A stretch of DNA of 64,000 nt from Vitrella brassicaformis CCMP3155 (lineage: Eukaryota > Protista > Chromerida). The stretch is from contig CDMY01000656.1 in NCBI GenBank assembly GCA_001179505.1, positions 124,001-188,000 on the forward strand, given 5' to 3'. The notes under the pieces are model-generated. The model did not search any database and was not told the origin of the DNA. It saw nothing but the letters and a program-made list of their open reading frames with translations. The position numbers were made by a program, and so were the translations under genes. This document shows, one piece after another, positions 19,146-48,826 of this stretch. Within the stretch, counting starts at the first letter, position 1. The number at the start of each line of letters is the position of its first letter.

Positions 19146-19445
19146 NNNNNNNNNNNNNNNNNNNNNNNNNNNNNNNNNNNNNNNNNNNNNNNNNNNNNNN
19201 NNNNNNNNNNNNNNNNNNNNNNNNNNNNNNNNNNNNNNNNNNNNNNNNNNNNNNNNNNNNNNNNNNNNNNNNNNNNNNNNNNNNNNNNNNNNNNNNNNNN
19301 NNNNNNNNNNNNNNNNNNNNNNNNNNNNNNNNNNNNNNNNNNNNNNNNNNNNNNNNNNNNNNNNNNNNNNNNNNNNNNNNNNNNNNNNNNNNNNNNNNNN
19401 NNNNNNNNNNNNNNNNNNNNNNNNNNNNNNNNNNNNNNNNNNNNN
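19146..19445. other. Assembly gap (300 N) flanked by G/purine-rich tracts
   Basis: Run of n, with (GGGA)n-like sequence on both sides. Confidence 0.99.
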
Positions 19446-25338: not shown

Positions 25339-26992
25339 TCATTTGCCGAACAGGTATTGCCAGAAGGTGACGTGCTGGAAGTCCTTCTTGGGGTCGCGCA
25401 GCGAATCGCTCGAATCGACGTCCTCACCCTGACCAGCACACATCCACAGACACACCCAATTCACACCCACTCCCTCATCTGGGCGTGTGTGTGTCTCTCT
25501 CTCGTACCGTCCTCTCCTCCGTGGGGTCATGTGGGAGCAGCCGCACGTCCTCCCGTGACGACACGGGCCTGGCCATGGCCTTGCCCGCCACCCGCCGTGC
25601 CTGGTGCGTGCTGCCGCTGGCCGCTGACATGTCGCTGTCCATGGCCTGCGACGACTGCTGGTCGTTGGTGTGATGGTTGAGGGTGTGGCGCGGTGGAGGG
25701 GGTGGGGGATGGCTGTGGCTGCCGGCACTGCCAACAAGCTTGCTGGTCTCGCTACTGCTCGCCTCGCCGTTGAGGTCGGGATCAGTGTGGGACGGCGGGG
25801 GCGAGTCGGGTTGTGTCGACATCTCGCTATTGGCGCGCTTGTCATCCGAGTCGTATGTGCTCACTTTGGTGAAGCCGTTGTTGGTCTGCGTGTGCAGGGG
25901 GAGGGGCGGGGGCGTGGAGGCGGTGGGCTGCTTGGACTCCGCCAGCTTGATCATCGAGTACCAGTAGGACCCCAGGATGGTCAGTGCGATGCCGCTGAGG
26001 GACTGCCATGACACCACCTCGCCGAACAGGACGATGCCGCCGATGGACTGCGCGCAGGCCTTGACCATGGCCACCATGTTGAAGGTCACGGGGTTGGTGA
26101 CCTTGATCATCAGGAAGGTGGCGATGTTGATGAGGATAGCAAGCAGCCCGCTCAGCACGAACGTCCCCCACATCTGCCAGGTGTCGGAGACCGAAAAGTC
26201 CCACGGCAGCTCGTTGGCCCAGTTGCCCTCGCCGGCAATGTAGATGCAGGGGAAGAAGAGGGGGATGGCCATGGTGACGTTGTAGGCCAGCATGAGGTTC
26301 TGGTTGTTGTCGCAGACCTCCAGCACCTTCTTGATGTAGACGTTGTAGAGCGCCTGGGTGACGGAGGACATCAGGCCGAGGATGACGCCGCCGGGCGAGA
26401 GTGTGGTGGGGTCGAGGGAGCCGACGATGAAGCCGAGGACGACCACCATGCAGGCCAGGATGGCCTTGCGGCTGGTGCTCTTGCCCAGAACCACATACAT
26501 CAACAGGATGTTGAACAGGATCGTCGTGCTCCGCGCCACCTGCACTCCACTCGCAACAAACACATAAGTGCAGTGCAGTGCCGAGTGACTGAGAGAAAAC
26601 CATTGATCGAAGCATTCCCTCGCCCTGCCGAGCCTCTGTCTGTTCGCCCATCTCACCTGGTAAGTCGACACCTGGACATTCTTGAGGCAGGTGTTGGCAA
26701 AGGCTATCATAGCAACGAAAGTGACGGTCACCGGCAGCACGGCCCGTGCGGTCTTGAGCTTGAACTCATAGGGAGGGAAGAAGGCGAGCGAGGGGTTGCA
26801 CTTGCCGACCTGCCCCATGACGACCACACAGACGAGTGCGACTATCTGCTGGAACCACGAGACGAACACGGGGTTCTGGAAGGTGCTGCTGAAGATATGG
26901 AAGTTGAGGAACACTATAGACAGGCTAATCACGAAGTAGAAAGCCATCGCTGAGAGCACCTCCTCAGCCCGACGGTCCATCCCCATCGCCAT
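25339..26992 (-). CDS. Nucleotide-sugar transporter, GDP-fucose transporter (SLC35C1/GFT)-like; 3 exons
   Basis: FYFVISLSIVFLN, PVFVSWFQQIV, AFANTCLKNVQVSTYQ|VARSTTILFNILL, YIKKVL and IKVTNPVTFNMVAMVKACAQS match SLC35C1-type motifs (YxVARSxT); about 10 hydrophobic segments. Confidence 0.88.
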
Positions 26993-27236
26993 ACTGCACA
27001 ACGCCGACGTCGCAAAGAGAGGGCTTCAACTTGGACGAGGAATTGCCTCTTGGATGTCTGTAGCCCTCAGCAAGCCCCTCTTCACCTTCTTCCCCTTTTC
27101 TCCCCCTGCTGCGTAGCTCGCAGTGGATTGCGAGCTCGTAATTCGGAGCAACATTTGGCTGTTTTTGCTGTGACAGAATGCGTTTAGCACAGAGAATATG
27201 AGTTCAATAAGGCCCCGGTGCGTCTGCCGCTCGGGG

Positions 27237-30200
27237 ATGAGACGGCTGTCACTTCTCGTGTCTTGGTTGGCTGTCTGCTGCTGGACAACAAGTGCACGCG
27301 GCGCCGTCCGAATCGTCGGCCGTGAGGTCTTCCCCCCTCCCCCCACAGATGGCGGCTCCGCTGCGGATCTAATCGACGGGTTCGTGACGTCAAAAAAGGA
27401 ATGAGTTCATTGCAAGCGAATGTGTGAGTGAGTGTGTGTCTTGTCTCTTGCCCTCTCTTGTGCAGCAACACATCCTCCTGTGTCACCGTCGGGGCATCTC
27501 CCAACGCACTCATGGCTTTTGCCGTGATCGAAACCGACCGCCCCATGACGCTTCTGGCCGTCAAGATCCACTACGCCGCACAAGTGAGGGCGGCCCTCTC
27601 TCTCTCCATATCTCACACCGTCGAAAGCCTCACCAGCGCACCAGAGTGCGCGACGCTTCGGATCGATGGCACGGGCGAGAGGGAGGTGCCATGTGTGGGC
27701 GAGGGGCGGGTGGTGTATATCGGCGTCTCTGGCGAGGTCAGCTTGTGTGAGGTGTCGCTGGTGCGGAAGAGCGACCGTGTAGTCGTCACAGGCGGGGAGA
27801 TGGCCCGAGTGCCGGTGGGGGGAGGGGTGGACGTCAGTGTGCAGGGGAAGAAACTGACCGGGGAGGAGAGAATACGCCTTGTTAACGTGCGTAAGCCTTC
27901 CTCCCCCGGCCACTCAGTCAGTCACGCCCATTAAGGAAGGGTTCTGCCTCTGTGCGTGTGGGCAGGGCAGTGTGACTTGTGGCAGCGATGAGGCCCTTCT
28001 CATGACGCCATCGCTCTCTGCTGCCTCGCTTGATGGCCCGCCACACACACTGGTGGCGTCTCAGGAAGAAACATGGAACGGCGGCGCACTGACACAGCCA
28101 GGTGTCTATCGGGTACATTCCTACAGACAAGGTCTGTTCGACTCGACAGCACTGGCTGGTGATATTGTTTTGTCCTGGTCAGGTGTGTTGGTGTGAGGGG
28201 ACGGGTGGCTGCGACGATGGGGGGGAATTTGACCTCGAGACACAACTAATCATTGTGGAGCCGAGGGCTGTCACCATTGTCAGGTACTTGATCGATGGAT
28301 GGATGGATGGACGACAGACATCCTGCTTGCCCTCACCATGTCCTCTGCAGCGAATCGATGGGTCTGTCTGCACCAACATCAGTCAGCCTTGCTAGGGACG
28401 GATCGGCGCTCTACATCGCAGACCCAGCCCAGCACACGTACTAGCGCCCACAAACTCCTCACGTACCACACGCACTGTCCTGTGAATGCGCAGCGTCTTC
28501 GAATACCGTCCGGGCGAGGCAAGTCTGAGAGTTGCGGCGGGAACAGGGACAGCGGGCTACAGTGGCGACAACGGTGCCGCCACATCGGCATTGCTCAACT
28601 CACCTCAGAGCGTGTCAGTCTCACCCAACACGGGAATAATCTTCATCGCAGACACTAACAACCACAGGCGCGCGCAAACGAGCAAGGGGGGGGGGGAGAG
28701 AACGCAAATGCAGCACCCTAACTCTCTCTGCGCTGGGTGGATGCAGGATTCGCGCAGTGGCGAATGGCACCATCGAGACTGTGGTTGGGACGGGTGTTGC
28801 GGGGTTCAGCGGGGATGGGGGACAGGCTACGCTGGCACAGCTGCGCACGCCCACTGACGTGCTGGTCGACAGAAACAACAACCTGTGCTGTGAATGACCG
28901 AATGGATACTGACCTACTCAGGTGCTCGTACATCTGCCGGTGGTGTGTATATCTGTCTGTGTGCAGGTGGATTGTGGACAGCGGCAACCAGAGGATCAGA
29001 ATCGTGTCACTATCCACAGGTGGGCGGGGCGACCATCCATACCACCCCCCACACCCTCACGACTCCCCAATGTGTGTGCACAGGCATCCCCGATGAGGCG
29101 GAGGAGGTGGTCCCGGGCACCATATCCACCAGTGCAGGAGACGGCCGAGTCAGCTCAGACGGCGGCAGGGAAGGCGTCATGTCTCTCGCAGGCTCGCTCA
29201 GCCACCCCAAGGCCCTCAGTGTCGCTTTCTCGTGAGCAGCCATGGAAATAAGACATGCATGCAGCACGTCACCTGCCCTGCGTGTGTGTATCCATCGAAT
29301 CGATGTCTCCAGGTATCTGTTTATCAGCAGCTCTTCAAACGACGTGCCAATCACCGTGTGGCTGGCCGAGCAGGCGGGCGTCAGACAGGTAGGTGAGGTG
29401 AATGAGACCTATGCCGATCTCTCTCTCTCATCCCCCCAAAAGCAAACACTGGCTGGCCGCACTGCAGGTGTCGCTGCGTCGTCAAGGGTATACGGGTCTG
29501 ATGCGCCCCCTGAAGGAAGAGGCCATCGACGGGTCGGGGAGCTTCAGCGATGTGGGAGGGGTGGCGACGGCCAGCGACGGCAGGCTCTTCACAAGCGACA
29601 GCACCGGCGGCGCTGTACACATGACACAGACGATCGAGGTCAGTGGTAGAACTCTCCTCCGCCACGCAGACGCACAGAAACGCTTGGTTGTCTGCGTTTC
29701 TTCTCCTCCAGTATGTGGCCACCGGTTGCTGGCTGTTCCTCGGATCTCCTCCCCTGGTTCCATCGATTGAAGAGCAGCACCCCCTGCTGATGGACAATCA
29801 CCTCATGCGAGTTGACCCAACCTTCATGTGCGGACAGGCGGCCATGGCTCTGGAGCTGCCAATGTTTGGCCTGCGGGATGGCGGCGTGTGCGTCGGCAGC
29901 ACCGACATGCCCTTTGTGTACAAAACGTACGGACCCTCGCTGGCGTGTGAGGACGGCTCTGGGGGCAAAGACGCAATGAGCGCATATCGCTTGACCTCCA
30001 GGACGACCACAGAAGAGAATCTGTTCACTAGGGTGCGGCTGGCGAGTGTCGTGGGGTCGCCACAGAAGATGTTCTACGGCAATGACATGCTCTGGGTGGC
30101 CGGTAGGCATGGAGGGAGAGAGGCAGCGATGGATGGATGAGCGATGCACCCACCCACCGTCTCCTTGCTGTGGCTGTGTTGTCTGTGCCAGTCAGTCCCC

Positions 30201-33200
30201 CTTCCCCGCACATAGCCCTCATCCTGCTGTCCATCTCAACCCAGCCAGGCCAGCGCTTCAGCTGTCTGGAAGGCCAGCTGTGCTCCATCACCATCCGGGG
30301 CAACGGCCTCGTGCCGTCCATACCTCTCACCCTCCTGCCGCCATCGCTCCCCTGTGGCAGAGACGTCACCCCGTTTCCCGTGATGTCTCCCGCCATGTCG
30401 ATGGAAAGCGTCTCGGGGCCAACGTCCTTTCTCTTCTCGTCCCTGACGTACGAAATCGGCCCGTTGCGGTCGCTGCAAGTCGGTACACACACGCACATGT
30501 GCTCCGTCTGTGTGCCGTTGTGCACTCTCTTTCTCTCCTTCCCCCCATGCCATGTGTGGATTGCAGTCGATGCATCAAGGAGGGAGTGGCAGTGTCCGCG
30601 AGTTCCGTATATGTCTGTGTGGCGCTGACACAGGCTGCTCTGTGAGTGAAGACTTCCGTCTCGACGCCGGGATGGTGCAGCTGGAGGGACCGATGTACCG
30701 TCACTACGAGGCGCCTGCTGGCGAGAATTTCGACCTCATTCTGAGGGGCAGCGCTCTCAGAGATGACGATGCCATTCGCGTCGTCGAGTGAGCGAACACA
30801 ATGGATAGAGAGAGACACACGGGGGACGGTGAAAAGTCTTTTTGTGCGGTAAACAGAAAGGAGGCTGGATGTTCGGCTGACCCTGTCTCTGCCAGTGTGG
30901 TCACGCTTGCATCTCCGGCACGATCGTCGGGCAACGAGTCAACCTCCGTGTTCGACTCCGTGCTGTCGAGTGAAGGAGGAGATTTCCTTGTATGCTGGTG
31001 TGGCACGGCCAATGCATCAGAGCTCATGCCGCTGGCACTCACAGACAGCTGCACCTCGGCGCCCAACTTCTCTGTCGAGGTGGGCGAAGAAGGTCGCGCC
31101 AACCGAAGGAATGACTATGTGCGTGGCGGCTTACTGGTGCTTGCAGGCGTCATATCTGACGGTGATCGGCCCCCGTGGTCTGCTGCAGAGCATGACGGTT
31201 GCTGCGGGACAGCCATTCAACGTCACTGTATTCGGTAGGGATCCTGACAGTAGCTACCACCAACCTGCACACGTGAGCATGTCTGCATCTGCACAGGTCG
31301 AGGCCTCTCTGTGGCCAACCGCATTCGCCTCGTCCCCCACTTGCCTTCGGCCGATCCTCTCACTGTCTGCAGCAACCCATTTGACCCAGCTGCCACAGGC
31401 CAACTGCTCGTGTCGCCATCCCAGCAGATGACACCTTTCGGCCCGTTCCACCGTGCGACCGATTTCAAGGTATGAGAAGTGATCCATGCCGTGAGTGACA
31501 CTCATGCAGCTGTGTTGTCCATTCCATTCCATTCCATTCCAGAGTGTGTGGGGCCCGATGGTTGTGGTCACACCCGGCGAGTATCAGGTTTGTTGGTGTC
31601 CGGGCACAACAGTCGCTGACGAGAAGAGCGAGTTGGTCGAGTGCTTCTCCAGCACACAATTCAGCACACGGGCAGGAGGCATCACCGTCACAGGTGTAAA
31701 CGAAATCTGAGGTCTCCTTCCTGTGCAATCATCTCGCCACTGGCCCTCGTTCAGGCAGTCTGAGCCCGAGCAACGATCCGCAATATGCCTCGTATCTGGA
31801 CAAGGTCACTCTCCATCCCAGCCTTCCCTCCCCCCTGCGAACCGCCCTGCCCATCCCCACGGGAGCGCCTCGTAGCGTCGCTATCACCACATGGACGCGA
31901 TCCCATCCACCCGCTATCGGCAGCCGCCAGACCGGCCCTGCCCGTGTGCGCGTCACCCTGTGCAGTGCCTCCGAGTGTCTCCCGCCCGTTGCGGAGCTTA
32001 CCATCCAGCCAAACTTCCATGGGTACGAGCGCGTCGCCAGTGAGGTGTTCACGCGGTCTATCGACCTCTCGGCTGCTGTCGGTCCGTCTTTTGCCGTCGA
32101 TCGCATGTATCTGAGGAACGTGGGCATCGTCGCAGACTGGCCCGCCGAGCGCATCACGGTCTCCTACTCCACCAGCACCATCTCTTTCCCCATCCAGGGG
32201 TGGCTTACAGTCAATGCGACAGCTTCACCGCTGCTGCCCTTGTCTCCCCCTCTACCACTGTTCTCGTCTTCCGGTTCTGCGTTGGAGGTGGATGAGTGCG
32301 GCGGGTGGTGTTATGGCGGGTACGTGTGTGTCGAGGAGAGGTGTGTGAGCCACTGTGGCGATGGCTGGGTGACGGGAGATGAGATGTGCGACGACGGAAA
32401 CCAGAGACAGGGAGATGGATGCGACGAAAAGTGCGCACGGCGGGCAGGAAAGGCAGCAGTCAAGTGACTTAGGTGAATGATGTCTCTTCCTGTGTCTGTG
32501 TGTGGTGCGGCTTTTATTCAGGTGTTCAATTGAGGCAGGTTACGAGTGCTATACGTCTCAGCCGCAGACCGCCCCGTCGACATGTCATCCCTTGGCGTGC
32601 ATCAACATCCCCACGGACCCCCCTACACCAAGCTGGGCCACACTAGATTGCTTCGTGTGCAACGAACCATCGTCGCCTTTTAGCCTTACAAATGCGTCCA
32701 TATCGTCCCCATACCGCGCATTCGGGTGCCATGAGCTCCCAAGCGGCCTCACGGGCCTCTGTGAGGCATCTGGGCCTTTTTCGTCTCTGTCGGCGGGAGG
32801 CTTTGATGCCCATCTGCCAACCAGAGTCCTCGAGACACAATCCTTAAGTATGGATGCCTTATCCCCCAGGATCGATGGGTGCAAGCACATTCTGTGTTGT
32901 CTGTGTCTCTTTTTATGTCTGTCAGTGGATGTGAAGGCGTGCAACCAGACCGCCGCTGTGGAGGTCTGCTTCCCCCTCGGCTCGCCAGTGCTTGTCAGCG
33001 CCACCCTCTCACGACGCCTCTCAAACATCAATCTCGTCTTCAACGCGCCGGTTGCCATCATGGCGTGCGACGCCTTCTATACCTTCTCATCCCAGTCGAG
33101 GATCATCCCGTGTGACGCCTTGCTCGACCTGGCCGCCTTAACAGCAGACTGGCGATGCCAATGGACGTCGCCCTTCCAGATATTTGTGTTCTTTCCCATT

Positions 33201-36200
33201 GCTGAGACGCCGCCGACGAGTGTGACGATGCGCGAGGGCCGAGTGGTGCTGCTGGCGGTAGCGGAGCAGTGGACGGACGTCAGCGGCAATGTGACAGGCT
33301 CCGGCCCTCCACTCGGATGGTTTGCCGGTGCGCAGACCGTCCCTGTGCTAAGCGACGAATCAGACTGTGGACACCAGAAGCAAGATGACAGAGGAGATGC
33401 TGCCCTCTTCCCCAGCGAATCATCACTGAGATGCCCCGTCATCGATTGGCCCGAGGCAGTGGGCGTGTCGGGGTGTTTTCCTGTCCTCCTGGACGCACTC
33501 ATGTCTCCCAACACCAAAGTGGGTGGCGGCTGGCGAGGGTTGCTCAGCGACTCGGCTGTTCTGACGTACGAGTGCTTCGGTGGCTCGTCGTGTGCCATTT
33601 TGCAGCCATGGCTGGGCAACGGATGCCAGGTCAGCGGCTCGGCTTACTGCAAGCTCAGGACGTTCCTCCCTGCAGCAGAGATCACGTCCAATGTGACTCT
33701 GAGGCTCACTATCGAGGCTGAGGGCTGCACAAGCGCCACACAGACGACACTCTACCCATTAACAACAGGAGGGGGCCAGCTCCCTCTGGCTTTGCCGCGG
33801 ACGCCCATGCAGCAAGAGATCGGCATCGCTGACCCACTCACCCTGCGGCTCGACACGGCCACGACGGCTCTGGAGACATGTCCGTCAGCATCAGACGCGA
33901 ACACCTATCCCTTCTCGGCTCAGCGGTCGCTGAACGTCGATCGGCCTCCGGTGACAGGGAGTGCATCCAGCCCGGTCTTCGCATGGACTGACGTCAACCA
34001 TCGAACCCATTCCCGCCTGCTGGCTGTCGAGTGGAGCATGTCCCCCCCACAGCCGGATCTCGCCCCCGTCAGCCAGTCGAACCCAGCCGTGTTTTCTCTC
34101 CCACCTTTCGCCCTACCCGTCGGCCAGTGGCGTGTGTCGGCCACCGTCTACCAGAGGAGCGAGGGCTCAGAGGCGGACGTGCCAACACAAGTGACGGTGC
34201 CATTTGACGTGCATGTCGTGGATCGATGGTCGGAAGCTGACTCGCGGCTGCTGGTGTCTCACTCTCCTGTGGTGGATGCGAGGTGCCCATTCGCCCTGCT
34301 GGCTCGTGTCGACCCATCTGTTGTCCTGGAGTTGCCACGCCTCATGAGCGTCACGGTCGAGTGGGCGTGTGAGACTGCGGATGGGATCAGCTGCCCTTTT
34401 GCCCTGACGACCGACCAGCTGACTGTCGGTGATGTGCTGCTGCAGAGCGACTTTGTGGGGATCGCTTACACGTCCACACCCACAGCAGGGTCCTATCGCT
34501 TCACAGCGACAGCGATGGCGAGGCCGATGGGCGGCTCTCAGTATGTTATTGCAACGACTGTTGCGTGGGTCGAGGCCAAGACGGTTGGCTACCTTGACGG
34601 CAGATCTCCGCAGTGTGTCGCTGGAGGCTTCCTACCAACACCGCGGCTCGTGTCTCATCAGGATTTGGGTCTTGATGCGCTGAGAGGCTACGTCGTGACG
34701 GAGGCTGCGGCCAGCCCGCCGTCATTGGCTGATGTGCAGTGGTTCGTGACGCCGGCAGATAGCGGTCATGTGGTGGCTTCCGCGGTGTCGGCGAACGAAC
34801 AGACAATCACACTGTCGTCTCTCACTCTGCAAGAGCTGACGCCTCCTGCCGGATGGAATGCCCTGCAGCTGACGGAAGGAGGAGAATACGTGTGGCGTCT
34901 CGGGATTGACCCCTCTCGGTATCAGTACGACAATGGCGGTGTTCTCGCAACGATCGAGGTGGCAAGGAGCGGGGCTCTCCAAGTCAATGCGCCTCCCTTG
35001 GTGGGGCAGCTCCCTATGCACGTTGACACCTCCCCTCCCACAGCCGGCATCACCCCGGTGACCCTCAACATCCTCGAGGTCGCCTCCCTGTCCCCATCCC
35101 TCGAACACCAGTTTGCCCTCAACACCACCACCATCCAGCCATTCGGCGATCCCTACATCACATGCACCCTTCCCCCAGGCCACTGGACGATACGCGGCAT
35201 GGCTGTCGACCCCCTCGGTGGGAGAGGCGAGGCGACGACAACAGTCCAGGTGCAGAGCCTTGCCCAGGGGTTGTTCCTGACTCCAACGAATCCCCCAACT
35301 CAACAGAAGGTTGTGGATCTGTGGGGGCGGTCGTTCGACAGCTGGGCCAGGAATGCCGTGAGAGTGCTTCTCCGGATTGAGGCTGGGCATCACTCTCCAT
35401 GGGCCATCCTGCAGACGTGTGCTTCGGTCATCGCTGAGTTGGAAGGTGAGACGCTGGAGGCAAAAGGGAAGGCTTAATGCATTGTGTGCGTGTGCGTGTG
35501 CATGTGTTGGCAGAATATCGCGCGGCATTGGATCGGGGCAGGGACGTCGTGAATGTGGCGCTTGTGGCGACTGCTCCTGATCCAGTAAACGCAGCGGCAC
35601 TCACCGTGGTGCATGACATGAATCCGTGCACGTCTGTTCCCTCGTTCTTGAATCTTGAATCATGTCAGGAGTCGGCCAGGGCCGTCAAGATCAGCTCGGG
35701 TGACCTCCTGTCCTCAATCCCGTCCTCCCGCACCCAATGGCTGGATCTGCAGACCACCGCCCTCCACTCGCTGCAGATCACCACACACATACTCTCCTCT
35801 CCAGGCATCCTCACAACGCCCCTCGCCCCCTCATCTGCCGCCGGCCGTCTGGCTGAGCTCGGCTCGCGGCTGCTGCTTGCCTACCCTCTGATGCCGCCCA
35901 CGTCGCATTCTGAGGGCACTGGCGACCTCATCACACTGATTACCGACGGGCTCAATGGCACAGCGGCCGCAGATGGCGACATCGGCATGGATGCCCTGTT
36001 GAAAGGCATGGCCCAGGTGGTTGTTGCCTTGGCGAGGGCGACGAGCGAAGCTGAGCTGACACGGTGGATTCGTGGAGACGACGTGGCCAGTGAGGGCACT
36101 CAGCTGGTCGGTCAGTCTGCTTACCATGACACCAAGCACCTCGCACGGGCGTACGAGACACAGGCGAAGGCTCTGATGTCGCTCTCGGCCTTTCTCGCGA

Positions 36201-39200
36201 CATCCTACCGAGGACAGCAGATCGTTCTGCAGGGCGGACCTGACTCCTGCATTGTCGTGACGCAGTGGGCGGAAGGCGAGACCGTTTCTCTCAGCGCGAC
36301 ACCGTGCGGGTCATCTGTGAACCTCACCCTCCCCGCCTCCTCCCCTGGCGCACTGCTGCCGTCTGGCCGTCGGCTGTCCACCTCCACGGCTTCGTTCGTG
36401 AGCCTGGCCGTCTGGAACGGCGGGTACTTCGGCTCGACAGAGGAGCCGGAGCGCTCTGTGGTCACGGCGGGTCGACTCAGCTCCCTTGTGACACCGGTAA
36501 TCAGTGTGGCTTTCGGCCCGGTGGGCGGGAATGAGACTGTTTTCGTTGACGAGGTTACCCTGCAGCTGCCCCTTATCTACAACCAAAGTAAGGAAGGGAC
36601 TACACATATTCAGGACAGGCGTCTTATGTCTCCTTTTTGTTGTGGGGCCATCAGATGACACTTTGAGATTTGCGGATCGCGCACGCTGCGTGTGGTGGCA
36701 CCCTGGCCTCCAAATGTTTACCTCTCTGTACTGCGGGGCGGCCGTCGACGGCTCCTCTGCCTCTCTCTCGTGCCGCTGCACGCGCCTCACACCCACCATC
36801 CTGTACGGCGAGCTCCTCAACGACATTTCTGCGTTCCTTGCCCCTCTGCCCCCTCTGCACATCCGCGATGGCGGCATCGCTGCGCTCTTCTGCATCTGGT
36901 CTGTCACCCTCTTTGGCCTGCTGCTGGTCTATGCCGGCCTGGCTTTTGACCGTCACAAGGGGCGCATCAACAAGGCCTTCTGGCTGAAGGCATGGTTCAT
37001 CGAGGAGGGGGCGGAGGGCGAACAGATAAGGTGGGCGGGGAGGAGGTACCGGACTTACTCTTGGGGCGGCGCTGGAAAGGGGACAAAGGGCAAAGGGGCG
37101 CTCTACCAGACCCTCAAGACAATGTCGGGCAGGACGGAAGGCCTCTCAGAAAGCGTGAGAGAGAGAGGGACACGATGGATGGATGCATCAAGTGCAGGAT
37201 ACGTGTGACGTCAAGTGGAGTGGAGTCTTGTGTGCTCAGGTGCGGACTCTCCGAATGATGCGTCGTCGGCAGCAGGGCCGGCAGGACACGAAAGAGGGCT
37301 CATCGTCGTCTTCTTCTTCTTCCGCCTCTGGCCGCTCCGCCCGCATGGCCATCGCCAAGAGAATGTTCCTCAGGTCAGTCAGCGGACACATTACATTCAC
37401 ACACAAGGGAGATGCCTGATGCTCCGCTCTGTCTCCTCCCACCATCTTTCTGTACAGGCAGAAGACGACAGACATCGAGAAGGGCCCTGAGGTCTCCCCA
37501 GACAGGCCGCCAGGCCCCTCCCCGCCCCCTGCTGACACGGCACCTGTGAAGCCAAAACAGCAGCGGGGCAAATGGGAGGTGCCCCTGCCCAGCTCAGTGC
37601 CTGGTGTCCCCGCCCCGCCCCGATCCCCTCCCCGCCAGCTGATGACACAGAAGAGTGAAGGACACGGCAGTGTGTCTGAGTTCGCCGCCTTGCCTCCGCC
37701 CCCCGCTCGCTTTGAGAGTGTTGGCGAGCACGCGATGAGCCCACCGGAAAACGGGCAGGAGGGAGCAAAGAAGGAGACCCATGCTGATCAGGAAGCCAAA
37801 ACTGGTGAGACACACATGTGACTGATCACGCCACCATGTCATGGTGGGTGGATGGATGGATGGATGTGCAGACCTGGCCAGCTCTCTGGCCAGCAGTGCC
37901 GGGGGTCAGCGGGGGATCCTCAAGCAGACTGGGGGCCCGGCGAATGGCAACGTGGGCGACAACAATAGCAATAGCCACAACCGGCAAGTGACGATGAAGT
38001 CGGACGAGAGAAGCCGGTCGGCCGACGAGAGATCACACGTGACGGTGGTGGAGACATTGCCAGAGGAGGACGAGTGGTCTCAGGCCACAAGCGACCTCGA
38101 TAGCGAGCTATCACACAAGGTAGGTGCTTGGGGGTCCACACGACGCACTGGGGGGAGGAGGGCTCCCACTCTCTCTCTGTGTGTGTGTGTGTGTGTGTGT
38201 TGTCAGCTCAGCTCGATGAAGACATTCGAGTTCACCGGGTGGTCCACCCTCATGACCATCTGCCTTGTCTTGTGGAAGCGGCACCCATTGCTCTCCCTCT
38301 TCACCATGAACCCACACATCGGCGCAGTCAAGAGGTGCCTGAACGTTTGTGTTGCTGGGAGAGAGACATCTCATCTCATTCGACCCTTCATGAATTTCTT
38401 CTGCAGAGCGCTGCTCCGTTTTGCCCACATAGCGAGCAGCGCCGCCATATTCTCTGCACTCTTCGCCTTCGCGCGGGCGTCGATCGCTGGCGACTGGTCG
38501 CCCAATTTCCGCCAGACCGTTGAGAGTGATGCCTCCAGACGGGTGTCGCTGGGATGCCATCGGGACCTTCTGCTGTTCTTCCTCCCTGTGCTGAGCGATT
38601 TGTTGGCGTATGCCTTGAGCCCGTCTAGTTACTTGTACGTGTTGGTGATGCGGAAGAGGGTCTATGTGGAGATCCTCTCGCCTGTGCAAAAAGACGACAT
38701 TGTCAACCTGTGAGCAAAGCCAATGTGTGTGGATCGCTGCCCATCTCCTCTGTGTGTGTGTGATTGTCAGGTGGCGTCTCCGCGACCGTCTGTCGTGTGT
38801 GTTGCTGTGGCTGTGGATCGTGTCTTGTGGGTTCGTCATCCCCCACGCCATCCTCCTCTCTGGCGGATTCGACAGTGTGGAGGGGCCATTCGCCAGCGGC
38901 CTGGCCCTCACTGTCTTCCTCTGGTGGCCCATCGCCACACCATTGCTGGTCAGACCCACACACAACACAAGAGAAACACCAAACACCTCGTGGACCCTTT
39001 TGTGTGTGTCTCCCTCTGTGTGTGTGGGCAGCTGCTAAGCACCCAGGTCATGCTTCTTCGGCTAGTGCTGTCTTATGACTGTGTCGACGGCCTGCTCACT
39101 CTGCTGCCCGGCCTGATGGACTTCTCGTGGATCCTATCCGGCGACAGACATGACCTCGTTGAGGAGATCAGACATTTGCACTACGAGACACACACGCTAG

Positions 39201-39433
39201 CTGAGGAGCTGAAGATGGCCCGGTTGCGCAAGCTCACTCGGCTGGCCACACGTGCGCAGGGGCCGGAGGGAGAGAGGCTGCGGGCTATGATAAGCAGGAT
39301 GGGGCCGAGAGTCAGCGGTGAACCGGCGGCAACCATTGGAGAGGAGAGCGATGGGTCGGCTGTAGTGGCGGCTGGGGACGTGGCAGGGGTAGCGAAAGAA
39401 GGAGGAAACGGCGCAGCGATGCCAGCTGGGTGA
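27237..39433 (+). CDS. Giant polycystin-1-like / GPS-domain receptor: signal peptide, CWC modules, NHL repeats, WSC, Myxococcus Cys-rich repeat, REJ-like region, GPS, about 5 TM; more than 25 exons
   Basis: Signal MRRLSLLVSWLAVCCWTTSARG; NHL VAAGTGTAGYSGDNGAATSALLNSPQSV...IFIADTNNHR; WSC GC...FGLRDGGVCVGS...YKTYGPSLACEDGSGG...SAY; CGDGWVTGDEMCDDGNQRQGDGCDEKC|SIEAGYEC; REJ-like QVNAPPLVG...LPPGHWTIRGMAVDPLG; GPS CVWWHPG...C...CRCTRLT then TM; RHPLLSLF and later hydrophobic segments. Confidence 0.82.
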
Positions 39434-44569: not shown

Positions 44570-47500
44570 ATGGCTCCCTGGCGGACGGCTTTCTCTTTCT
44601 CTCTGCCGCACCGGCTGGTGGACAACCCGCTGCTGCTGACTATCGGCAGGTTCGACGGCCGCCACCCGTCGCTCGTGGCCGCAACCACACCCACACAGCT
44701 GCTCATCCACTCAACCACACAGACGTACGTACTTGCGGCGCAAACAGAGCAGAAGAGGCTGTGCCTTCATGGACTGATTTGTTGTGTGTGTGTTTGTGTG
44801 TCTGTCTGTCTGTCTGTCAGGGCTGGAGGCGGGGTGAGTTTGTTGAACGTTGGCGAGAGCGTGACGTGTGTGGATGCGGGGCGGCTGCACCCGACGCTGG
44901 GGCGGGACTGGTTGCTCATCGGCACGGCACAGCAGCTGCGCGTCTATGACGTGCATGAGAACCAGGTCAGTCAGCCCAGCGACACCCATACCTGCACACT
45001 AGGGGGGAAGGGGGAGAGGGAGGGAGAGAGAAACGCCCTGACACAGACACCCAGGTGTGTGTGGTTGTGGTTGTGGTTGTGGTTGTGTTTGTGTTTGTGT
45101 GGTTAGGACATCTTCACAGTAGAGGTCTCGGATGGCGCGAGTGTCGTCCGCTGCCTGCCCATCGCAGGACATCCGGCCGAGGGAGGCAATGTGCTCGCCA
45201 TCGTCGGTAGGCCCACCTGCACACATCCACCCACGGTGTGTTGTGTGCAGGGGTGCGTGTGCGTGTGTGTGTGCAGGTGGCAACTGCAGTGTGTTGGGTT
45301 TTGACGACACTGGTGTGGAGGTGTTCTGGACGGTCACGGGCGACACCGTCCGCACCATGGCCGCTGGCAGGGTCACCGCCAACGACGCAAAGCCCACCAG
45401 CAAACTGCTGATAGGCAAGCGAAGCGAACAAACTGCTGATAGGCAAACACCAGTCCATCCTTGTGTGTGTGCAGGAACGGACGACTACGCCATCCGCGTG
45501 TATGAGCGAGAGGAGGCCCTCCACGAGATCGCCGAGACCGAGGCCGTCGCACAAGTCGTCGCCATCCCGTCAGTGAGCCACACCTGACACCCACCATCCT
45601 GCCCCGGAAACCAACACACCTCCCCACCCCACCGCTCGATCGCTTTGCTTGTGATGGATGCAATGCAATGCAGCGATTACGGCTTCGCGTACCTGCTGGA
45701 CAACCACACCTATGGCGTGTACGCCATCGCCTCCCCCACATCCCCCCCCACACGCGTGTGGCGGCACAAGAAGGGCGGCAGTGGCGGCGGTGGGCGTGCC
45801 GTCGTGGCCATCTGTGTTATGGATGTGGACGGCGACGGGCAGAACGAACTCATATGCGGGTGCGTCTCATGACCACGAAAGAAACCAAGTGTGTGCGCGT
45901 GTGTTAGGTATGAGGACGGTCGTGTGGAGGTGCGGCACATCGCCACAGGAGTCGTTGTGGGCGAGGAGCCGGCGGCACCAAGCGCGACAGACACCCACCC
46001 CGGGCGACTGCTGGGCTTGATGGCGTACGACTACCGCGGCGACGGACACATGAACCTCATCGCCGTCAACACCAATGTCCGTCCGTCCGTCGACCCGACC
46101 GGGCCACACACCCACACACACACCCAGATGCCCATCCATCCTGTGGTGTGGTGTCTGTCGTGTGTAGGGTGATGTGAGGGGGTGGGTGGCGGCCCCTGAC
46201 ACGGACCGCCTGCAGAAGGAACTGCAGAGGGCGCCTCAGAAGCGGCGGAGTCGGCTGGGACGGGGTGGGGGCGAGGTGGACACATACGCAACTGCGGCAG
46301 AGGCCAACGAAGCCTACAGGTGATGTGTCGACGGACTGGTTCCCATCTATCTCATCTTCTCTCTCTTTGTGTGTGTGGTTCTGGTAGGTCTCTGCTGCGC
46401 GAGAAGCAGACCCTGCTGAAGGAGCTGACTTCCTACGAGGCCAACATGAAGGCCCTGACCACCACCAGCCACGAGGCGTCTCCATCATCGGCAGGGGTCA
46501 TCCCGCCCGACACACAGCTCACCTGGACACTCCTCCCCAATGCAGCTGAGGTTAGGGATGGAAAGACACACAGACACAGACACACAGACACTCTGTGTGT
46601 GTGGTGGGTGTCAGGGGGCGGTGGAGCTGACTCTGCAGCTGAGCAACCACTGCGTCATCAGGGCGGTGGTGCTGTTGGGCGAGGGGCTGTTCGAAGGCGA
46701 CTGCTGCACGCTGCACCCGATGCCGCCGGCAAACAACGTAACGCACCCATCCCCCTCCCACACACAGCCAAGCACCCCTCTCCCTCTCCCTCTCTCTCTC
46801 TGTGTGTGTGTGTGTGTGTGTGTCAGGTGACAGTGCGGATCGCCCCTGCCCGCAATGTGTCGACATCGCTGAGCGTCCGGGCCTTCGTCGGCCTGTCGGC
46901 GTCATCCACACAATACCACCTATTCGAGGTGGGTGCCCTGCGCTGTGCCACACATAGACAGACCTGCACACACGCACATGAGCGTCTGTGTGTGCGTGTG
47001 TGTCAGCTGGAGGTGGCCTTCCCCAAGTTCGCCATGTACGCGGCAGTGACGCCCGACACAGAGACCTTCAACCAGTACACCGCCATGGTACGTCATCCCT
47101 CCCTCCCTCCCTCCCTATGTGGCTTTGGGGGTGGTGTGCAGAAGGAGGAGTCCTACGTCGTATTTGACGCACCTGAAGAGGCAGCAAAGGTGACACTCGT
47201 GTGGGTCAGTCTCCATTCACCACTTTCTGTATGTGTGTGTGTGTGTGTGTGTCTCGCAGTTTGTCGGCTGGTTCGAGCACGCCTTCGCGCTTAGCCCTGA
47301 TGACCGAACCAGAGTGCGGCAAGCACTGAGGGCATGCAAGCAGCCAGGTAGGTAACCCCACAAACACTGTACGCCAACATGCCGCGGTGGCTGTGGCTGT
47401 CTGTCAGGCGGCTGTGCAGAGGTGGTCTTCACTTCCCTCCGACCAGCCAAGGACACAAACGACCAGCCAGGTAACCCATTCCNNNNNNNNNNNNNNNNNN

Positions 47501-48826
47501 NNNNNNNNNNNNNNNNNNNNNNNNNNNNNNNNNNNNNNNNNNNNNNNNNNNNNNNNNNNNNNNNNNNNNNNNNNNNNNNNNNNNNNNNNNNNNNNNNNNN
47601 NNNNNNNNNNNNNNNNNNNNNNNNNNNNNNNNNNNNNNNNNNNNNNNNNNNNNNNNNNNNNNNNNNNNNNNNNNNNNNNNNNNNNNNNNNNNNNNNNNNN
47701 NNNNNNNNNNNNNNNNNNNNNNNNNNNNNNNNNNNNNNNNNNNNNNNNNNNNNNNNNNNNNNNNNNNNNNNNNNNNNNNNNNCCCCCCCCCCCCCCCCCC
47801 CCACACACACCAGCATCCCTAGCATCCCTGTGTGTATATGTCAGGTGACTGTCTGGGCATCTCTCTGAGTGCCCCTGATGCGGCTGCTGCTGCTGGTGGT
47901 GGCAGTGGGTTGCCGCGAGTGCGTGTGGTGTGCGGCGACATGGAGGCCCTCAGCGACGTCATAGCCCACATGGCCGAGTACTTCAAAATCGACCAGCTCG
48001 ACACCATCGCACACGTGCCTCAGGTCAGTCAGGCAAACAGAATACTTCAGGACTGACTGACTGACTTGTGTGTGTGTGTGTGTGTGTGTACTCTGTGGTG
48101 TGGTGTGCAGGAGCTGGATCGTCTGGGTGGTGTGTTGGGAAGAGTGGAGGGGCTGCAGGCCGCCAGGGCCAAAATGACGGCTGAAATGGCTGACAACTCA
48201 CAACTGGTGAGCGTGTGTGTAGTAGTGGGTTGTCAGGTCTCTGTTTGCCATCAGGTCAAGTCGTTAGTGCTGAAGGCCGAGGAGGCCCGGATTCTCAATC
48301 GCATGTAAGAGTGTGTGTGTGTGTGTGTGTGGACACCACACCGTGTGCGGCCCTCAATCAGACTCTGATGTGTGTGTGTGTCGTGGCTTCGCAGGTCAGT
48401 GGCCAAGCAGCTGTTCACCCAGCTGCAGCAGCTCAACCAGGAGATGGTCGGCGAGTACGTCAAGCGGTGCGGCAACTACGACGCCCTCATGGCCGAGCTC
48501 AAGGACCTCAACACGTCCATTCAGAGAGCCGCCAACCTAAGAGGTCAACGACTGACGCCCTTGCAATTCTGATGTCCATCTCCATCTGTGTGTGTGTGTA
48601 GTTGGTGCGAGCAGGACTCGTGTGGTGTCTGCGTGCCGCCAGGCGCTCAAGGCGCAGAACATGCCCGAACTCTTCAAGGCAAGAGAAACCGCCAACCCAC
48701 ACACACACACCATACATGTGATCAGATCGCTGGCGTGAGTGGCAGGCACATTGTGTTGTGTGTGGTTGGTAGGTGATCAGCACGGGCCACCCCTCTGCAT
48801 CAGGGGCAGCGACGCAGAACGTGTGA
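44570..48826 (+). CDS. BBS2: Bardet-Biedl syndrome 2 protein (BBSome subunit); many exons, spans an assembly gap
   Basis: IGRFDGRHPSLVAAT, VSLLNVGESVTCVDAGRL...LLIGT...YDVHENQ|DIFTVEVSDGAS, GNCSVLGFDDTGVEVFWTVTGDTV, GTDDYAIRVYE, DVDGDGQNELICG, LLREKQTLLKELTSYE, VKSLVLKAEEARIL and NQEMVGEYVKRCGNYDALMAELKDLNTSIQRAANLR are collinear with BBS2. Confidence 0.93.
47483..47782. other. Assembly gap (300 N) inside the BBS2 locus
   Basis: Run of n followed by a poly-C tract. Confidence 0.99.

What the first reader, a model, noticed from the sequence alone, without database searches (positions are those of the whole stretch)
27237..39433. 12-kb polycystin-1-like sensory receptor with an unusual extracellular domain string
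Seen, in order: signal peptide; CWC modules; several NHL repeats (28520-29640); WSC domain (29712-30000); more CWC modules; Myxococcus-type Cys repeat (32345-32600); a ~2.5 kb single-exon beta-rich REJ-like region; a helical GAIN-like region; GPS (36680-36800); TM1; a long disordered loop; about 4 more TMs. Established: REJ-GAIN/GPS-TM is the polycystin-1 backbone, and animal PKD1 also carries WSC. Inference: this is a roughly 3000-aa protist receptor that uses an NHL propeller and WSC as ligand or carbohydrate sensors, with no visible PLAT or channel domain. It is a candidate host/surface-sensing receptor in a free-living relative of apicomplexans.
Basis: partly seen in the sequence, partly recalled or inferred. 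Interest (0 to 1): 0.75.

Follow-up and report, generated by a model that had tools for sequence, protein, structure and literature searches.

The report
Divergent channel-less polycystin-like algal receptor
This stretch of the alga Vitrella brassicaformis most likely encodes one surface receptor of about 3,200-3,300 residues, a very divergent member of a large gene family in this genome that has a GPS-type motif followed by five membrane helices, resembling the front half of polycystin-1 in layout but lacking its PLAT domain and channel half.

Summary

**Supported by tools**
- One NHL repeat passes Pfam's cut-off.
- One DUF4215 Cys repeat passes Pfam's cut-off.
- There is a 998-codon open exon.
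- TM1 is a strong hydrophobic helix.
- There are four further membrane helices.
- There is no PLAT domain and no channel domain.

**Weak or inconclusive**
- The GPS motif scores 17.2 bits, below Pfam's cut-off of 22.5. It reads R-L-T instead of H-L-T/S.
- REJ likeness rests on one hhalign match (probability 40%) and protein-language-model hits.
- The GAIN fold could not be tested. The single-sequence AlphaFold model had pLDDT 35.

**Not supported**
- WSC gave no hit, here or anywhere else in the genome.

**New here**
- The helices after the loop (TM2-TM5) belong to a module found downstream of true GPS motifs at 15 or more other loci of this genome.
- A profile of that module picks the three C-terminal exons as the top three of 1,491 open segments in the window, in colinear order.
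- Kinship of this module with polycystin-1 could not be shown by profile or by fold search.
- The 998-residue exon has no detectable relative among 1.84 billion protein representatives.

The scan has already reported this family several times on other DNA of this genome. A single transcript is plausible from frame-consistent GT-AG splicing, but I had no RNA evidence.

The parts
27237..27305 (+). Start codon and signal-peptide-like N-terminus (MRR + hydrophobic core + SARG|A)
   Evidence: Read from the translations. Not tested with a predictor.
27466..28283 (+). N-terminal exons with the first CWC module (VCWCEGTGGC at 28186)
   Evidence: No Pfam family.
28340..29640 (+). NHL repeat region, split over about 5-6 short exons (probable beta-propeller)
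   Evidence: Pfam NHL E 1.4e-5 (25.3 bits, over the cut-off) at 28594-28668 and TEN_NHL E 3e-4. The other blades are by eye.
29712..30102 (+). It has WSC-like spacing but only 4 of 8 Cys. Not confirmed.
   Evidence: No Pfam hit up to E 10. PF01822 found nothing in the genome.
30634..31693 (+). Exons with two more CWC modules (30993, 31591)
   Evidence: No Pfam family. Only one weak paralogous match in the genome.
32309..32434 (+). DUF4215 (Myxococcus-type Cys-rich repeat)
   Evidence: Pfam PF13948, E 3.1e-9, 37.4 bits.
32522..35445 (+). Giant single exon (974 codons within a 998-codon open frame), the beta-rich ectodomain. A REJ-like block lies at 34866-35072.
   Evidence: No relative among 1.84e9 representatives and no paralogue. 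ESM-atlas best hits are REJ clusters at 0.88. hhalign against own-genome REJ pieces gives E 2.9e-4, probability 40%. Pfam and a local REJ HMM are not significant.
35514..36587 (+). Exon running from helices into strands, at the position of a GAIN domain (subdomain A and most of B)
   Evidence: Position and sequence pattern. AF2 single-sequence model has pLDDT 34.8 and is unusable; its DSSP shows helices at 61-229, then strands. No Pfam hit and no paralogue.
36588..36654 (+). 67-nt GT..AG intron joining the GAIN-like exon to the GPS exon in frame
   Evidence: Read. Reproduced by the splice model.
36687..36791 (+). GPS-type motif (C-x2-W...F-x4-C...C-R-C-T-R-L-T) with Arg at the usual His position
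   Evidence: Pfam GPS 17.2 bits, E 0.007, below the cut-off of 22.5. The pattern is unique in the window, against 0.02 expected. Paralogue GPS profiles do not reach it.
36867..36950 (+). TM1, followed by FDRHK, a juxtamembrane motif also seen in paralogues
   Evidence: Hydropathy 2.36. Motif compared by eye.
36951..38206 (+). First cytoplasmic loop: about 310-350 low-complexity basic/Ser/Pro-rich residues in 3-4 exons. No PLAT.
   Evidence: No Pfam hit.
38207..38334 (+). Pre-TM2 helix with the family motif (W)KRHPLLSLFTMNP..AVKR
   Evidence: Family profile E 2.3e-3, HMM positions 121-159.
38408..38707 (+). TM2 and TM3. The preceding 72-nt in-frame intron (38335-38406) is inferred.
   Evidence: The spliced reading fits the family's TM2 spacing.
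38772..38948 (+). WRLRDR motif, TM4 and the start of TM5
   Evidence: Family profile E 6.8e-4, HMM positions 310-360.
39032..39433 (+). End of TM5, the PGLMDFSW motif, an amphipathic or coiled-coil-like tail, and the stop codon at 39431-39433
   Evidence: Family profile E 0.016, HMM positions 411-440. Translation.

Best explanation
The interval holds one multi-exon gene of Vitrella brassicaformis, with about 25 or more exons and about 3,200-3,300 codons.

**Proposed layout**
- Outside the cell: a signal peptide, Cys-containing 'CWC' modules, an NHL propeller, a DUF4215 Cys repeat, a roughly 970-residue beta-rich region with a faint REJ-like block, and a GAIN-like helix-to-strand region. That region ends in a degenerate GPS motif (R-L-T).
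- In the membrane: TM1, a cytoplasmic loop of about 310-350 disordered residues that takes the place of PLAT, and then TM2-TM5.
- Inside the cell: a coiled-coil-like tail.
- The topology is N-out, C-in, and it fits the positive-inside rule.

**Family.** The gene is a very divergent singleton of a family with 15 or more loci in this genome. Members have a GPS motif plus five TM helices and no channel half.

**Inferred mechanism**
- The propeller and Cys-rich modules bind an external ligand or surface.
- The GAIN-like domain couples the ectodomain to the five-helix bundle.
- Because His is replaced by Arg, self-cleavage is probably absent or inefficient.
- Signalling would go through the long cytoplasmic loop and tail.
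- It may act together with the separately encoded PKD2-like channels of this genome.

**Shown and inferred**
- Shown: the domains and motifs listed, family membership of TM2-TM5, and the absence of PLAT and a channel domain.
- Inferred: a single transcript, the GAIN fold, the cleavage state, ligand sensing and a channel partner.
For: - Organism: the neighbouring gene's product is an NCBI protein of Vitrella brassicaformis CCMP3155. The genome is 72.7 Mb in 1,064 contigs.
- Pfam hits: NHL and DUF4215.
- GPS: sub-threshold Pfam hit plus a pattern that is unique in the window.
- TM helices: hydropathy and reading of the translations.
- tblastn: the C-terminal exons match colinearly, on the right strand, 1.5-3 kb downstream of Pfam-positive GPS motifs in six paralogous loci.
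- Family size: the module occurs at 15 or more loci, many next to GPS hits.
- Family profile: built only from paralogues, it ranks our three exons first to third of 1,491 open segments, in the right order (E 6.8e-4, 2.3e-3, 0.016).
- Splicing: frame-consistent GT-AG junctions at every step. A crude splice model gives one ORF of 9,804 nt.
- Coding score: outside the training exons it is about twice that of the opposite strand or a control region.
- PKD_channel loci exist, but on other contigs.
- Arg at the general-base position also occurs in BAI3, which was uncleaved in HEK293 and insect cells (PMC3321182).
Against:
- Paralogue GPS profiles do not detect our GPS.
- The GAIN exon has no detectable relative, and its AF2 model is useless.
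- Each family-profile hit is modest on its own.
- At genome scale, a single paralogue used as query does not find this locus.
- The 998-residue exon has no relative at all. That would also fit a fast-decaying or misread gene.
Confidence: 0.72

Rival explanations
1. It is a true polycystin-1 homologue by descent. The REJ, GAIN/GPS and TM1-TM5 parts share ancestry with animal PKD1, and only PLAT and the channel half are missing.
For: - The order REJ-like, then GPS, then TM1, then a long first cytoplasmic loop, then four TM helices mirrors the front half of PC1.
- ESM-atlas hits for the big exon are all REJ clusters.
- hhalign matches the REJ block.
- Two paralogues carry Pfam REJ upstream of GPS.
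- The family's pre-TM2 motif (RDHP..LF..P..FTAVQR) resembles, from my memory only, the PKD1 motif before TM2. This was not tested.
Against: - No Pfam REJ hit up to E 10. The local REJ HMM gives E 1.5.
- Family TM profiles find no PDB chain at E up to 10.
- There is no PLAT and no PKD_channel.
Confidence: 0.3
2. The interval holds two or more genes. One example would be a secreted NHL/CWC protein followed by a separate REJ-like/GPS membrane protein. Another would be a single-pass receptor ending after TM1 plus a separate four-TM protein.
For: - There is no transcript evidence.
- Coding potential is low at 37150-37450 and 38090-38200.
- The crude splice model mis-sets some exons.
Against: - No non-coding gap is longer than about 310 nt.
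- All parts lie on one strand with frame-consistent junctions.
- The arrangement GPS, TM1, loop, TM2-TM5 recurs at 12 or more paralogous loci.
- An annotated partial paralogue, P0014, begins inside the low-complexity loop.
- Only the first exon has a signal peptide.
Confidence: 0.15
3. It is a decaying or non-functional paralogue of the GPS/five-TM family.
For: - The GPS motif is degenerate (R-L-T).
- It is the most divergent family member, invisible to a single-paralogue search.
- The big exon has no relatives.
Against: - The 998- and 402-codon frames have no stop.
- Family motifs and the positive-inside pattern are kept.
- Codon bias is sustained throughout.
Confidence: 0.08

Closest known systems
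Polycystin-1 family (PKD1, PKD1L1-3, PKDREJ, sea-urchin REJ proteins)
   Same: - A large modular ectodomain.
- A possible REJ-like block just before a GPS-type motif.
- The GPS motif lies about 25 residues before TM1.
- A long first cytoplasmic loop, then TM2-TM5.
- A coiled-coil-like C-terminal tail.
- PKD2-like channels are encoded elsewhere in the genome.
   Different: - No PLAT in loop 1.
- Only five TM helices, so no channel-like TM6-TM11.
- R-L-T instead of H-L-T/S.
- REJ is not detectable by Pfam.
- No sequence or fold match of the TM module to solved polycystin structures.
- The ectodomain uses NHL, CWC and DUF4215 modules. I found none of the PKD1-type ectodomain modules as I recall them (LRR, C-type lectin and PKD repeats), nor WSC.
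Adhesion GPCRs (class B2; GAIN domain structures 4DLQ and 4DLO)
   Same: - A modular adhesive ectodomain.
- A GPS-type motif directly before TM1.
- Arg at the general-base position, as in BAI3 (PMC3321182).
   Different: - Five helices, not seven.
- No 7tm_2 match.
- A disordered loop of more than 300 residues after TM1.
- The GAIN fold was not verified.
The channel-less GPS/five-TM receptor family of Vitrella brassicaformis
   Same: - The colinear TM2-TM5 module with the motifs RDHP..LF..NP..AVQR, WRxKER and P..DFSW.
- The FD.RHK motif after TM1.
- A low-complexity loop 1.
- A giant mosaic ectodomain.
   Different: - It is the most divergent member.
- Its GPS is not recognised by the family's own GPS profiles.
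- It lacks the canonical HL(T/S) triad. One paralogue, on contig C240, also reads T-R-L-A.
- Its ectodomain has an NHL propeller and no detectable paralogue.

Membership tests
Polycystin-1 family | REJ module (PF02010) N-terminal to the GPS | tested here: inconclusive
   Against: no Pfam hit up to E 10, and the local REJ HMM gives E 1.5. For: hhalign against own-genome REJ pieces gives E 2.9e-4, probability 40%, at residues 796-864 of the exon, and the ESM-atlas best hits are all REJ clusters at 0.88.
Polycystin-1 family | GAIN domain ending in a GPS motif next to TM1 | tested here: inconclusive
   Pfam GPS scores 17.2 bits, E 0.007, below the cut-off of 22.5. The Cys/Trp pattern is unique in the window. 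The AF2 model of the GAIN exon has pLDDT 34.8. The exon-joined fold was not attempted.
Polycystin-1 family | H-L-T/S autoproteolysis triad | tested here: not met
   The sequence reads C-R-C-T-R-L-T. Arg replaces His, as in BAI3.
Polycystin-1 family | PLAT/LH2 domain in the first cytoplasmic loop | tested here: not met
   No PF01477 hit in any open segment between 36950 and 38710. The whole genome has only one PLAT locus, on another contig.
Polycystin-1 family | Eleven TM helices, the last six PKD-channel-like (PF08016) | tested here: not met
   Five helices, then a stop codon at 39431. No PF08016 hit. All PKD_channel loci lie on other contigs.
Polycystin-1 family | TM2-TM5 homologous to those of solved polycystin-1 or PKD1L3 | tested here: inconclusive
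   Family profiles A2 and A4 find no PDB chain. The AF2 model of a paralogue's module gives only generic helical matches. TM1 was not part of that model.
Adhesion GPCR (class B2) | Seven-TM secretin-like domain after the GPS | tested here: not met
   No 7tm_2 or any other Pfam hit. Five helices, with a loop of more than 300 residues after TM1.
Vitrella GPS/five-TM receptor family | Colinear TM2-TM5 module with the family motifs, downstream of a GPS on the same strand | tested here: met
   A profile built from paralogues only ranks exons 38207-38710, 38772-38948 and 39032-39430 as the top three of 1,491 segments, in order. tblastn shows colinearity in six loci.
NHL repeat (PF01436) | Pfam match over the curated cut-off | tested here: met
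   25.3 bits against a cut-off of 20, E 1.4e-5, at 28594-28668. The other blades are by eye only.
DUF4215 (PF13948) | Pfam match over the curated cut-off | tested here: met
   37.4 bits against a cut-off of 27, E 3.1e-9.
WSC (PF01822) | Pfam match and the eight-Cys pattern | tested here: not met
   No hit up to E 10. Only 4 of the 8 Cys positions are present by eye. No PF01822 match anywhere in the genome, although that search's controls also stayed silent.

The most novel reading that the evidence does not exclude
The five-helix module may be the free-standing ancestral 'front half' of polycystin-1. On this reading, alveolates keep the receptor (GPS plus TM1-TM5) and the PKD2-like channel as separate genes. 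Animal PC1 would then have arisen by fusing such a receptor to a channel subunit and inserting PLAT. This gene would work in trans with one of the dozen or so PKD_channel genes of Vitrella.
Probability: 0.12. Interest if true: 0.8.

Novelty: new variant of a known kind. Interest (0 to 1): 0.4.

Why it matters
GAIN/GPS receptors are central to animal mechanosensing and to polycystic kidney disease, and their origin is unclear. A large alveolate family couples a GPS-type motif to a five-helix anchor, without PLAT or a channel half. If it proves related to polycystin-1, it would show what the receptor part can do by itself.

This particular gene adds an NHL-propeller ectodomain and a naturally His-less GPS. 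That makes it a useful natural test of whether cleavage is needed in this family. It is one more member of a family the scan has already met several times, so its individual weight is moderate.

Tried and rejected
- **Big exon, phmmer.** The 998-residue exon against 1.84e9 representatives gave 0 hits, not even itself.
- **Big exon, word search.** The same exon gave no hit. The search is limited to proteins of 549-1,746 aa.
- **Own-genome searches.** The big exon, the GAIN exon and the GPS/TM1 exon found only themselves.
- **Loop exon.** An own-genome search returned only (TG)n-encoded CVCVCV noise.
- **Paralogue GPS/TM1 profiles against the window.** Not significant.
- **PDB sequence searches.** Our exons, a paralogue module and the family profiles A2 and A4 found nothing relevant.
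- **AF2 of the GAIN exon alone.** pLDDT 34.8, so no fold search was run on it.
- **AF2 of a paralogue's TM2-TM5 with 28 sequences.** pLDDT 62. Foldseek and VIA-align gave only generic helical matches.
- **First MAFFT alignment of module fragments (A3).** It was out of register and was discarded.
- **Family profile A4 against the 5.8e9-cluster database.** It found only one partial Vitrella protein, P0014. The search was limited to 196-623 aa.
- **Literature searches.** Searches for chromerid or alveolate REJ/GPS/polycystin receptors found nothing specific.
- **Joined model.** Exons were searched one by one by reference. The joined spliced protein was never searched or folded. Only its length was counted.
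Full report
**Setting.** The window is G000:C656:124001-188000 of a 72.7-Mb, 1,064-contig genome. The neighbouring minus-strand gene at 25475-27001 encodes a nucleotide-sugar transporter. Its product is in NCBI as a protein of Vitrella brassicaformis CCMP3155 (P0001). GC content is about 0.6 throughout the interval. The + strand carries many short open segments plus two long ones, of 998 and 402 codons.

**Check of the observation, part by part.** I scanned every stop-free segment separately against Pfam.
- NHL passes the curated cut-off once: 28594-28668, 25.3 bits, E 1.4e-5. There is a weak teneurin-NHL hit as well. Four more blade-like stretches between 28340 and 29640 are visible by eye only.
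- DUF4215 is clear at 32309-32434 (E 3e-9).
- The motif C-W-C occurs three times in coding frames, at 28186, 30993 and 31591. Each sits in the shared context G-x-[YF]-x-V-C-W-C-x-G. It matches no Pfam family and has almost no detectable paralogue.
- The proposed WSC at 29712-30000 gave no hit even at E 10. It has WSC-like spacing but only half of the cysteines, and PF01822 found nothing in the genome. I treat it as not confirmed.
- The 998-codon frame at 32481-35474 is real. It has no Pfam hit and no paralogue in the genome. It also has no hit at all among 1.84 billion protein representatives.
- GPS is a sub-threshold Pfam hit (15.8-17.2 bits, E 0.02-0.007, cut-off 22.5) at 36684-36791. The canonical pattern of four Cys and the Trp is present (CVWW...F...C...CRCTRLT). 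A regular expression for it matches once in the window, against 0.02 expected from shuffles. In the paralogous loci it otherwise matches only at GPS sites that Pfam recognises. I wrote that pattern after seeing the site, so this is support, not proof.
- TM1 follows about 25 residues later (36867-36950, hydropathy 2.36).
- No PLAT, PKD_channel or 7tm_2 match exists anywhere in the interval.

**Gene structure.**
- Reading the DNA, every step from the big exon to the stop codon can be joined by GT..AG introns of 62-87 nt that keep the frame. For example, the GAIN-like exon ends at 36587 and the GPS exon starts at 36655.
- A crude dynamic-programming splice model, trained on the two long exons, finds one continuous ORF from the ATG at 27237 to 39430. 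It has 25 exons and 9,804 nt.
- Its coding score over the 5.4 kb that were not used for training is 174. The opposite strand scores 69 and another region of the window scores 79.
- The model mis-sets some short exons. It skips an NHL-like exon near 28340-28430 and cuts the Pfam NHL hit. Where the family alignment disagreed with it, I preferred my own junctions (38334|38407 and 38948|39032).
- No non-coding gap exceeds about 310 nt.
- Exons were searched one by one by reference. The joined protein was not searched or folded.

**What the C-terminal part is.**
- The genome holds at least 12 Pfam-positive GPS loci and 6 REJ loci. REJ lies upstream of GPS at C204 and C27. There is a single PLAT locus elsewhere.
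- tblastn of our post-loop exons against 10 kb around ten GPS loci gave matches that are colinear and on the right strand. They lie 1.5-3 kb downstream of the GPS in six loci.
- One paralogue, L037:5100-6530, has the whole module in one exon. With it as query, 15 or more loci appear, many beside GPS hits.
- The module consists of:
  - a pre-TM2 helix (..EYVEW...F.EV.RRDHPLLKLFILNP..FTAVQR);
  - TM2, a short outer loop and TM3;
  - a cytoplasmic loop;
  - WRxKER followed by TM4;
  - TM5;
  - P..(L/F)DF(S/T)(W/F) and an amphipathic helix (spliced example P0014).
- I built a profile from 91 paralogous exon pieces, none of them from this window. I searched it against all 1,491 open segments of the window.
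- Our three exons rank as hits one to three, in model order: E 6.8e-4 (WRLRDR and TM4), 2.3e-3 (KRHPLLSLFTMNP..AVKR) and 0.016 (PGLMDFSW).
- The C-terminal half of the finding is therefore a divergent member of this family. It has five TM helices, N-terminus outside and C-terminus inside, and basic residues on the cytoplasmic side of each helix.
- The paralogues mostly have canonical C-x-C-x-H-L-(T/S) sites. Ours reads T-R-L-T and the one on C240 reads T-R-L-A.
- In BAI3 the same His-to-Arg change goes with lack of cleavage in HEK293 and insect cells, although brain BAI proteins are cleaved (PMC3321182).

**REJ and GAIN.**
- For the big exon, the ESM-atlas feature search returned only REJ clusters among its family-bearing hits. 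The best scored 0.88 with 183 of 256 shared features. By that tool's own calibration this is a lead, not a finding.
- hhalign of five own-genome REJ pieces against the exon aligned the REJ core to residues 796-864. That core is L..G.eY..Rl ... l.VN.PP..G.v.V.P, and ours reads QLTEGGEYVWRL...LQVNAPPLVGQL. The match has E 2.9e-4 and probability 40%.
- In an unbiased window-wide search, my local REJ HMM reached only E 1.5 for the same region. Pfam found nothing. REJ-likeness is therefore plausible but not established.
- The GAIN-like exon shows the expected order: long helices, then strands such as ..FVSLAVWNGGYF.., ..VTPVISVAF.. and ..VTLQLPL.., then the GPS.
- The single-sequence AlphaFold model had pLDDT 34.8, so I ran no fold search on it.

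**Kinship with polycystin-1.**
- The layout is that of the front half of PC1.
- From memory only, the family's pre-TM2 motif looks like the PKD1 motif before TM2.
- Nothing I could run confirmed this. Family profiles found no PDB chain at E up to 10.
- PKD_channel matches occur at 19 places on 13 contigs in the genome. None of those contigs is among the ones where I found a GPS/five-TM locus.
- My reading is that the gene has a polycystin-1-like layout, but membership of the PC1 family is not shown. Two defining features, PLAT and the channel half, were tested and are not met.

**Earlier notes of this scan.**
- After I had reached this reading, I found that the scan has already reported this family several times on other DNA of the same genome.
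- Those notes agree on the channel-less five-helix layout and on a large family.
- They disagree on whether kinship with PC1 can be shown. My tests side with 'not shown'.
- One note reports relatives in dinoflagellates and Perkinsus. I could not test that. My only cross-species search of the module was limited to proteins of 196-623 residues and found just a partial Vitrella protein.

**Verdict.** This is a real, probably single, giant receptor gene. REJ and GAIN remain weakly supported. The gene is a strongly diverged member of an unstudied, lineage-expanded family rather than something unique.

Noticed in passing
window 25475-27001 (-): Neighbouring gene for a nucleotide-sugar (GDP-fucose-type) transporter of the TPT family. 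It is annotated in NCBI as a 483-aa Vitrella brassicaformis protein (P0001). The raw ORF is 91% identical because it includes an in-frame intron.
   Followed up: partly
window 19146-19445 and 47483-47782: Two runs of exactly 300 N, either assembly gaps or withheld stretches.
   Followed up: no
window 38175-38200 and other introns: (TG)n microsatellites in introns translate as CVCVCV. They produce dozens of spurious genome-wide protein matches.
   Followed up: yes
G000 contigs C47, C153, C434, C243, C569, C446, C366, C591, C807, C628, C520, C420, C176: PKD_channel (PF08016) matches at 19 places on these 13 contigs. None of these contigs is among those where I found a GPS/five-TM receptor locus. 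Receptor-like and channel-like halves therefore appear to be separate genes in this alga.
   Followed up: partly
L040 (G000:C240:68934-69017, -): A second family member with a degenerate GPS (C-A-C-T-R-L-A). Loss of the catalytic His is therefore not unique to this gene.
   Followed up: no
L053 and L035 (G000:C204:82970-84250 and 94943-100016); L042 and L039 (G000:C439): Family members lie in pairs on the same contig. On C204 they are in tandem. On C439 they are on opposite strands, 47-51 kb and 63-67 kb. This suggests local duplication.
   Followed up: no
model m343f26280d68 (L037:5412-6479): AlphaFold places a small beta-hairpin in the outer loop between TM2 and TM3 of the family module (residues 91-106, pLDDT about 80). 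This corresponds to the conserved V.L..F.....W.LT.RQ stretch.
   Followed up: no
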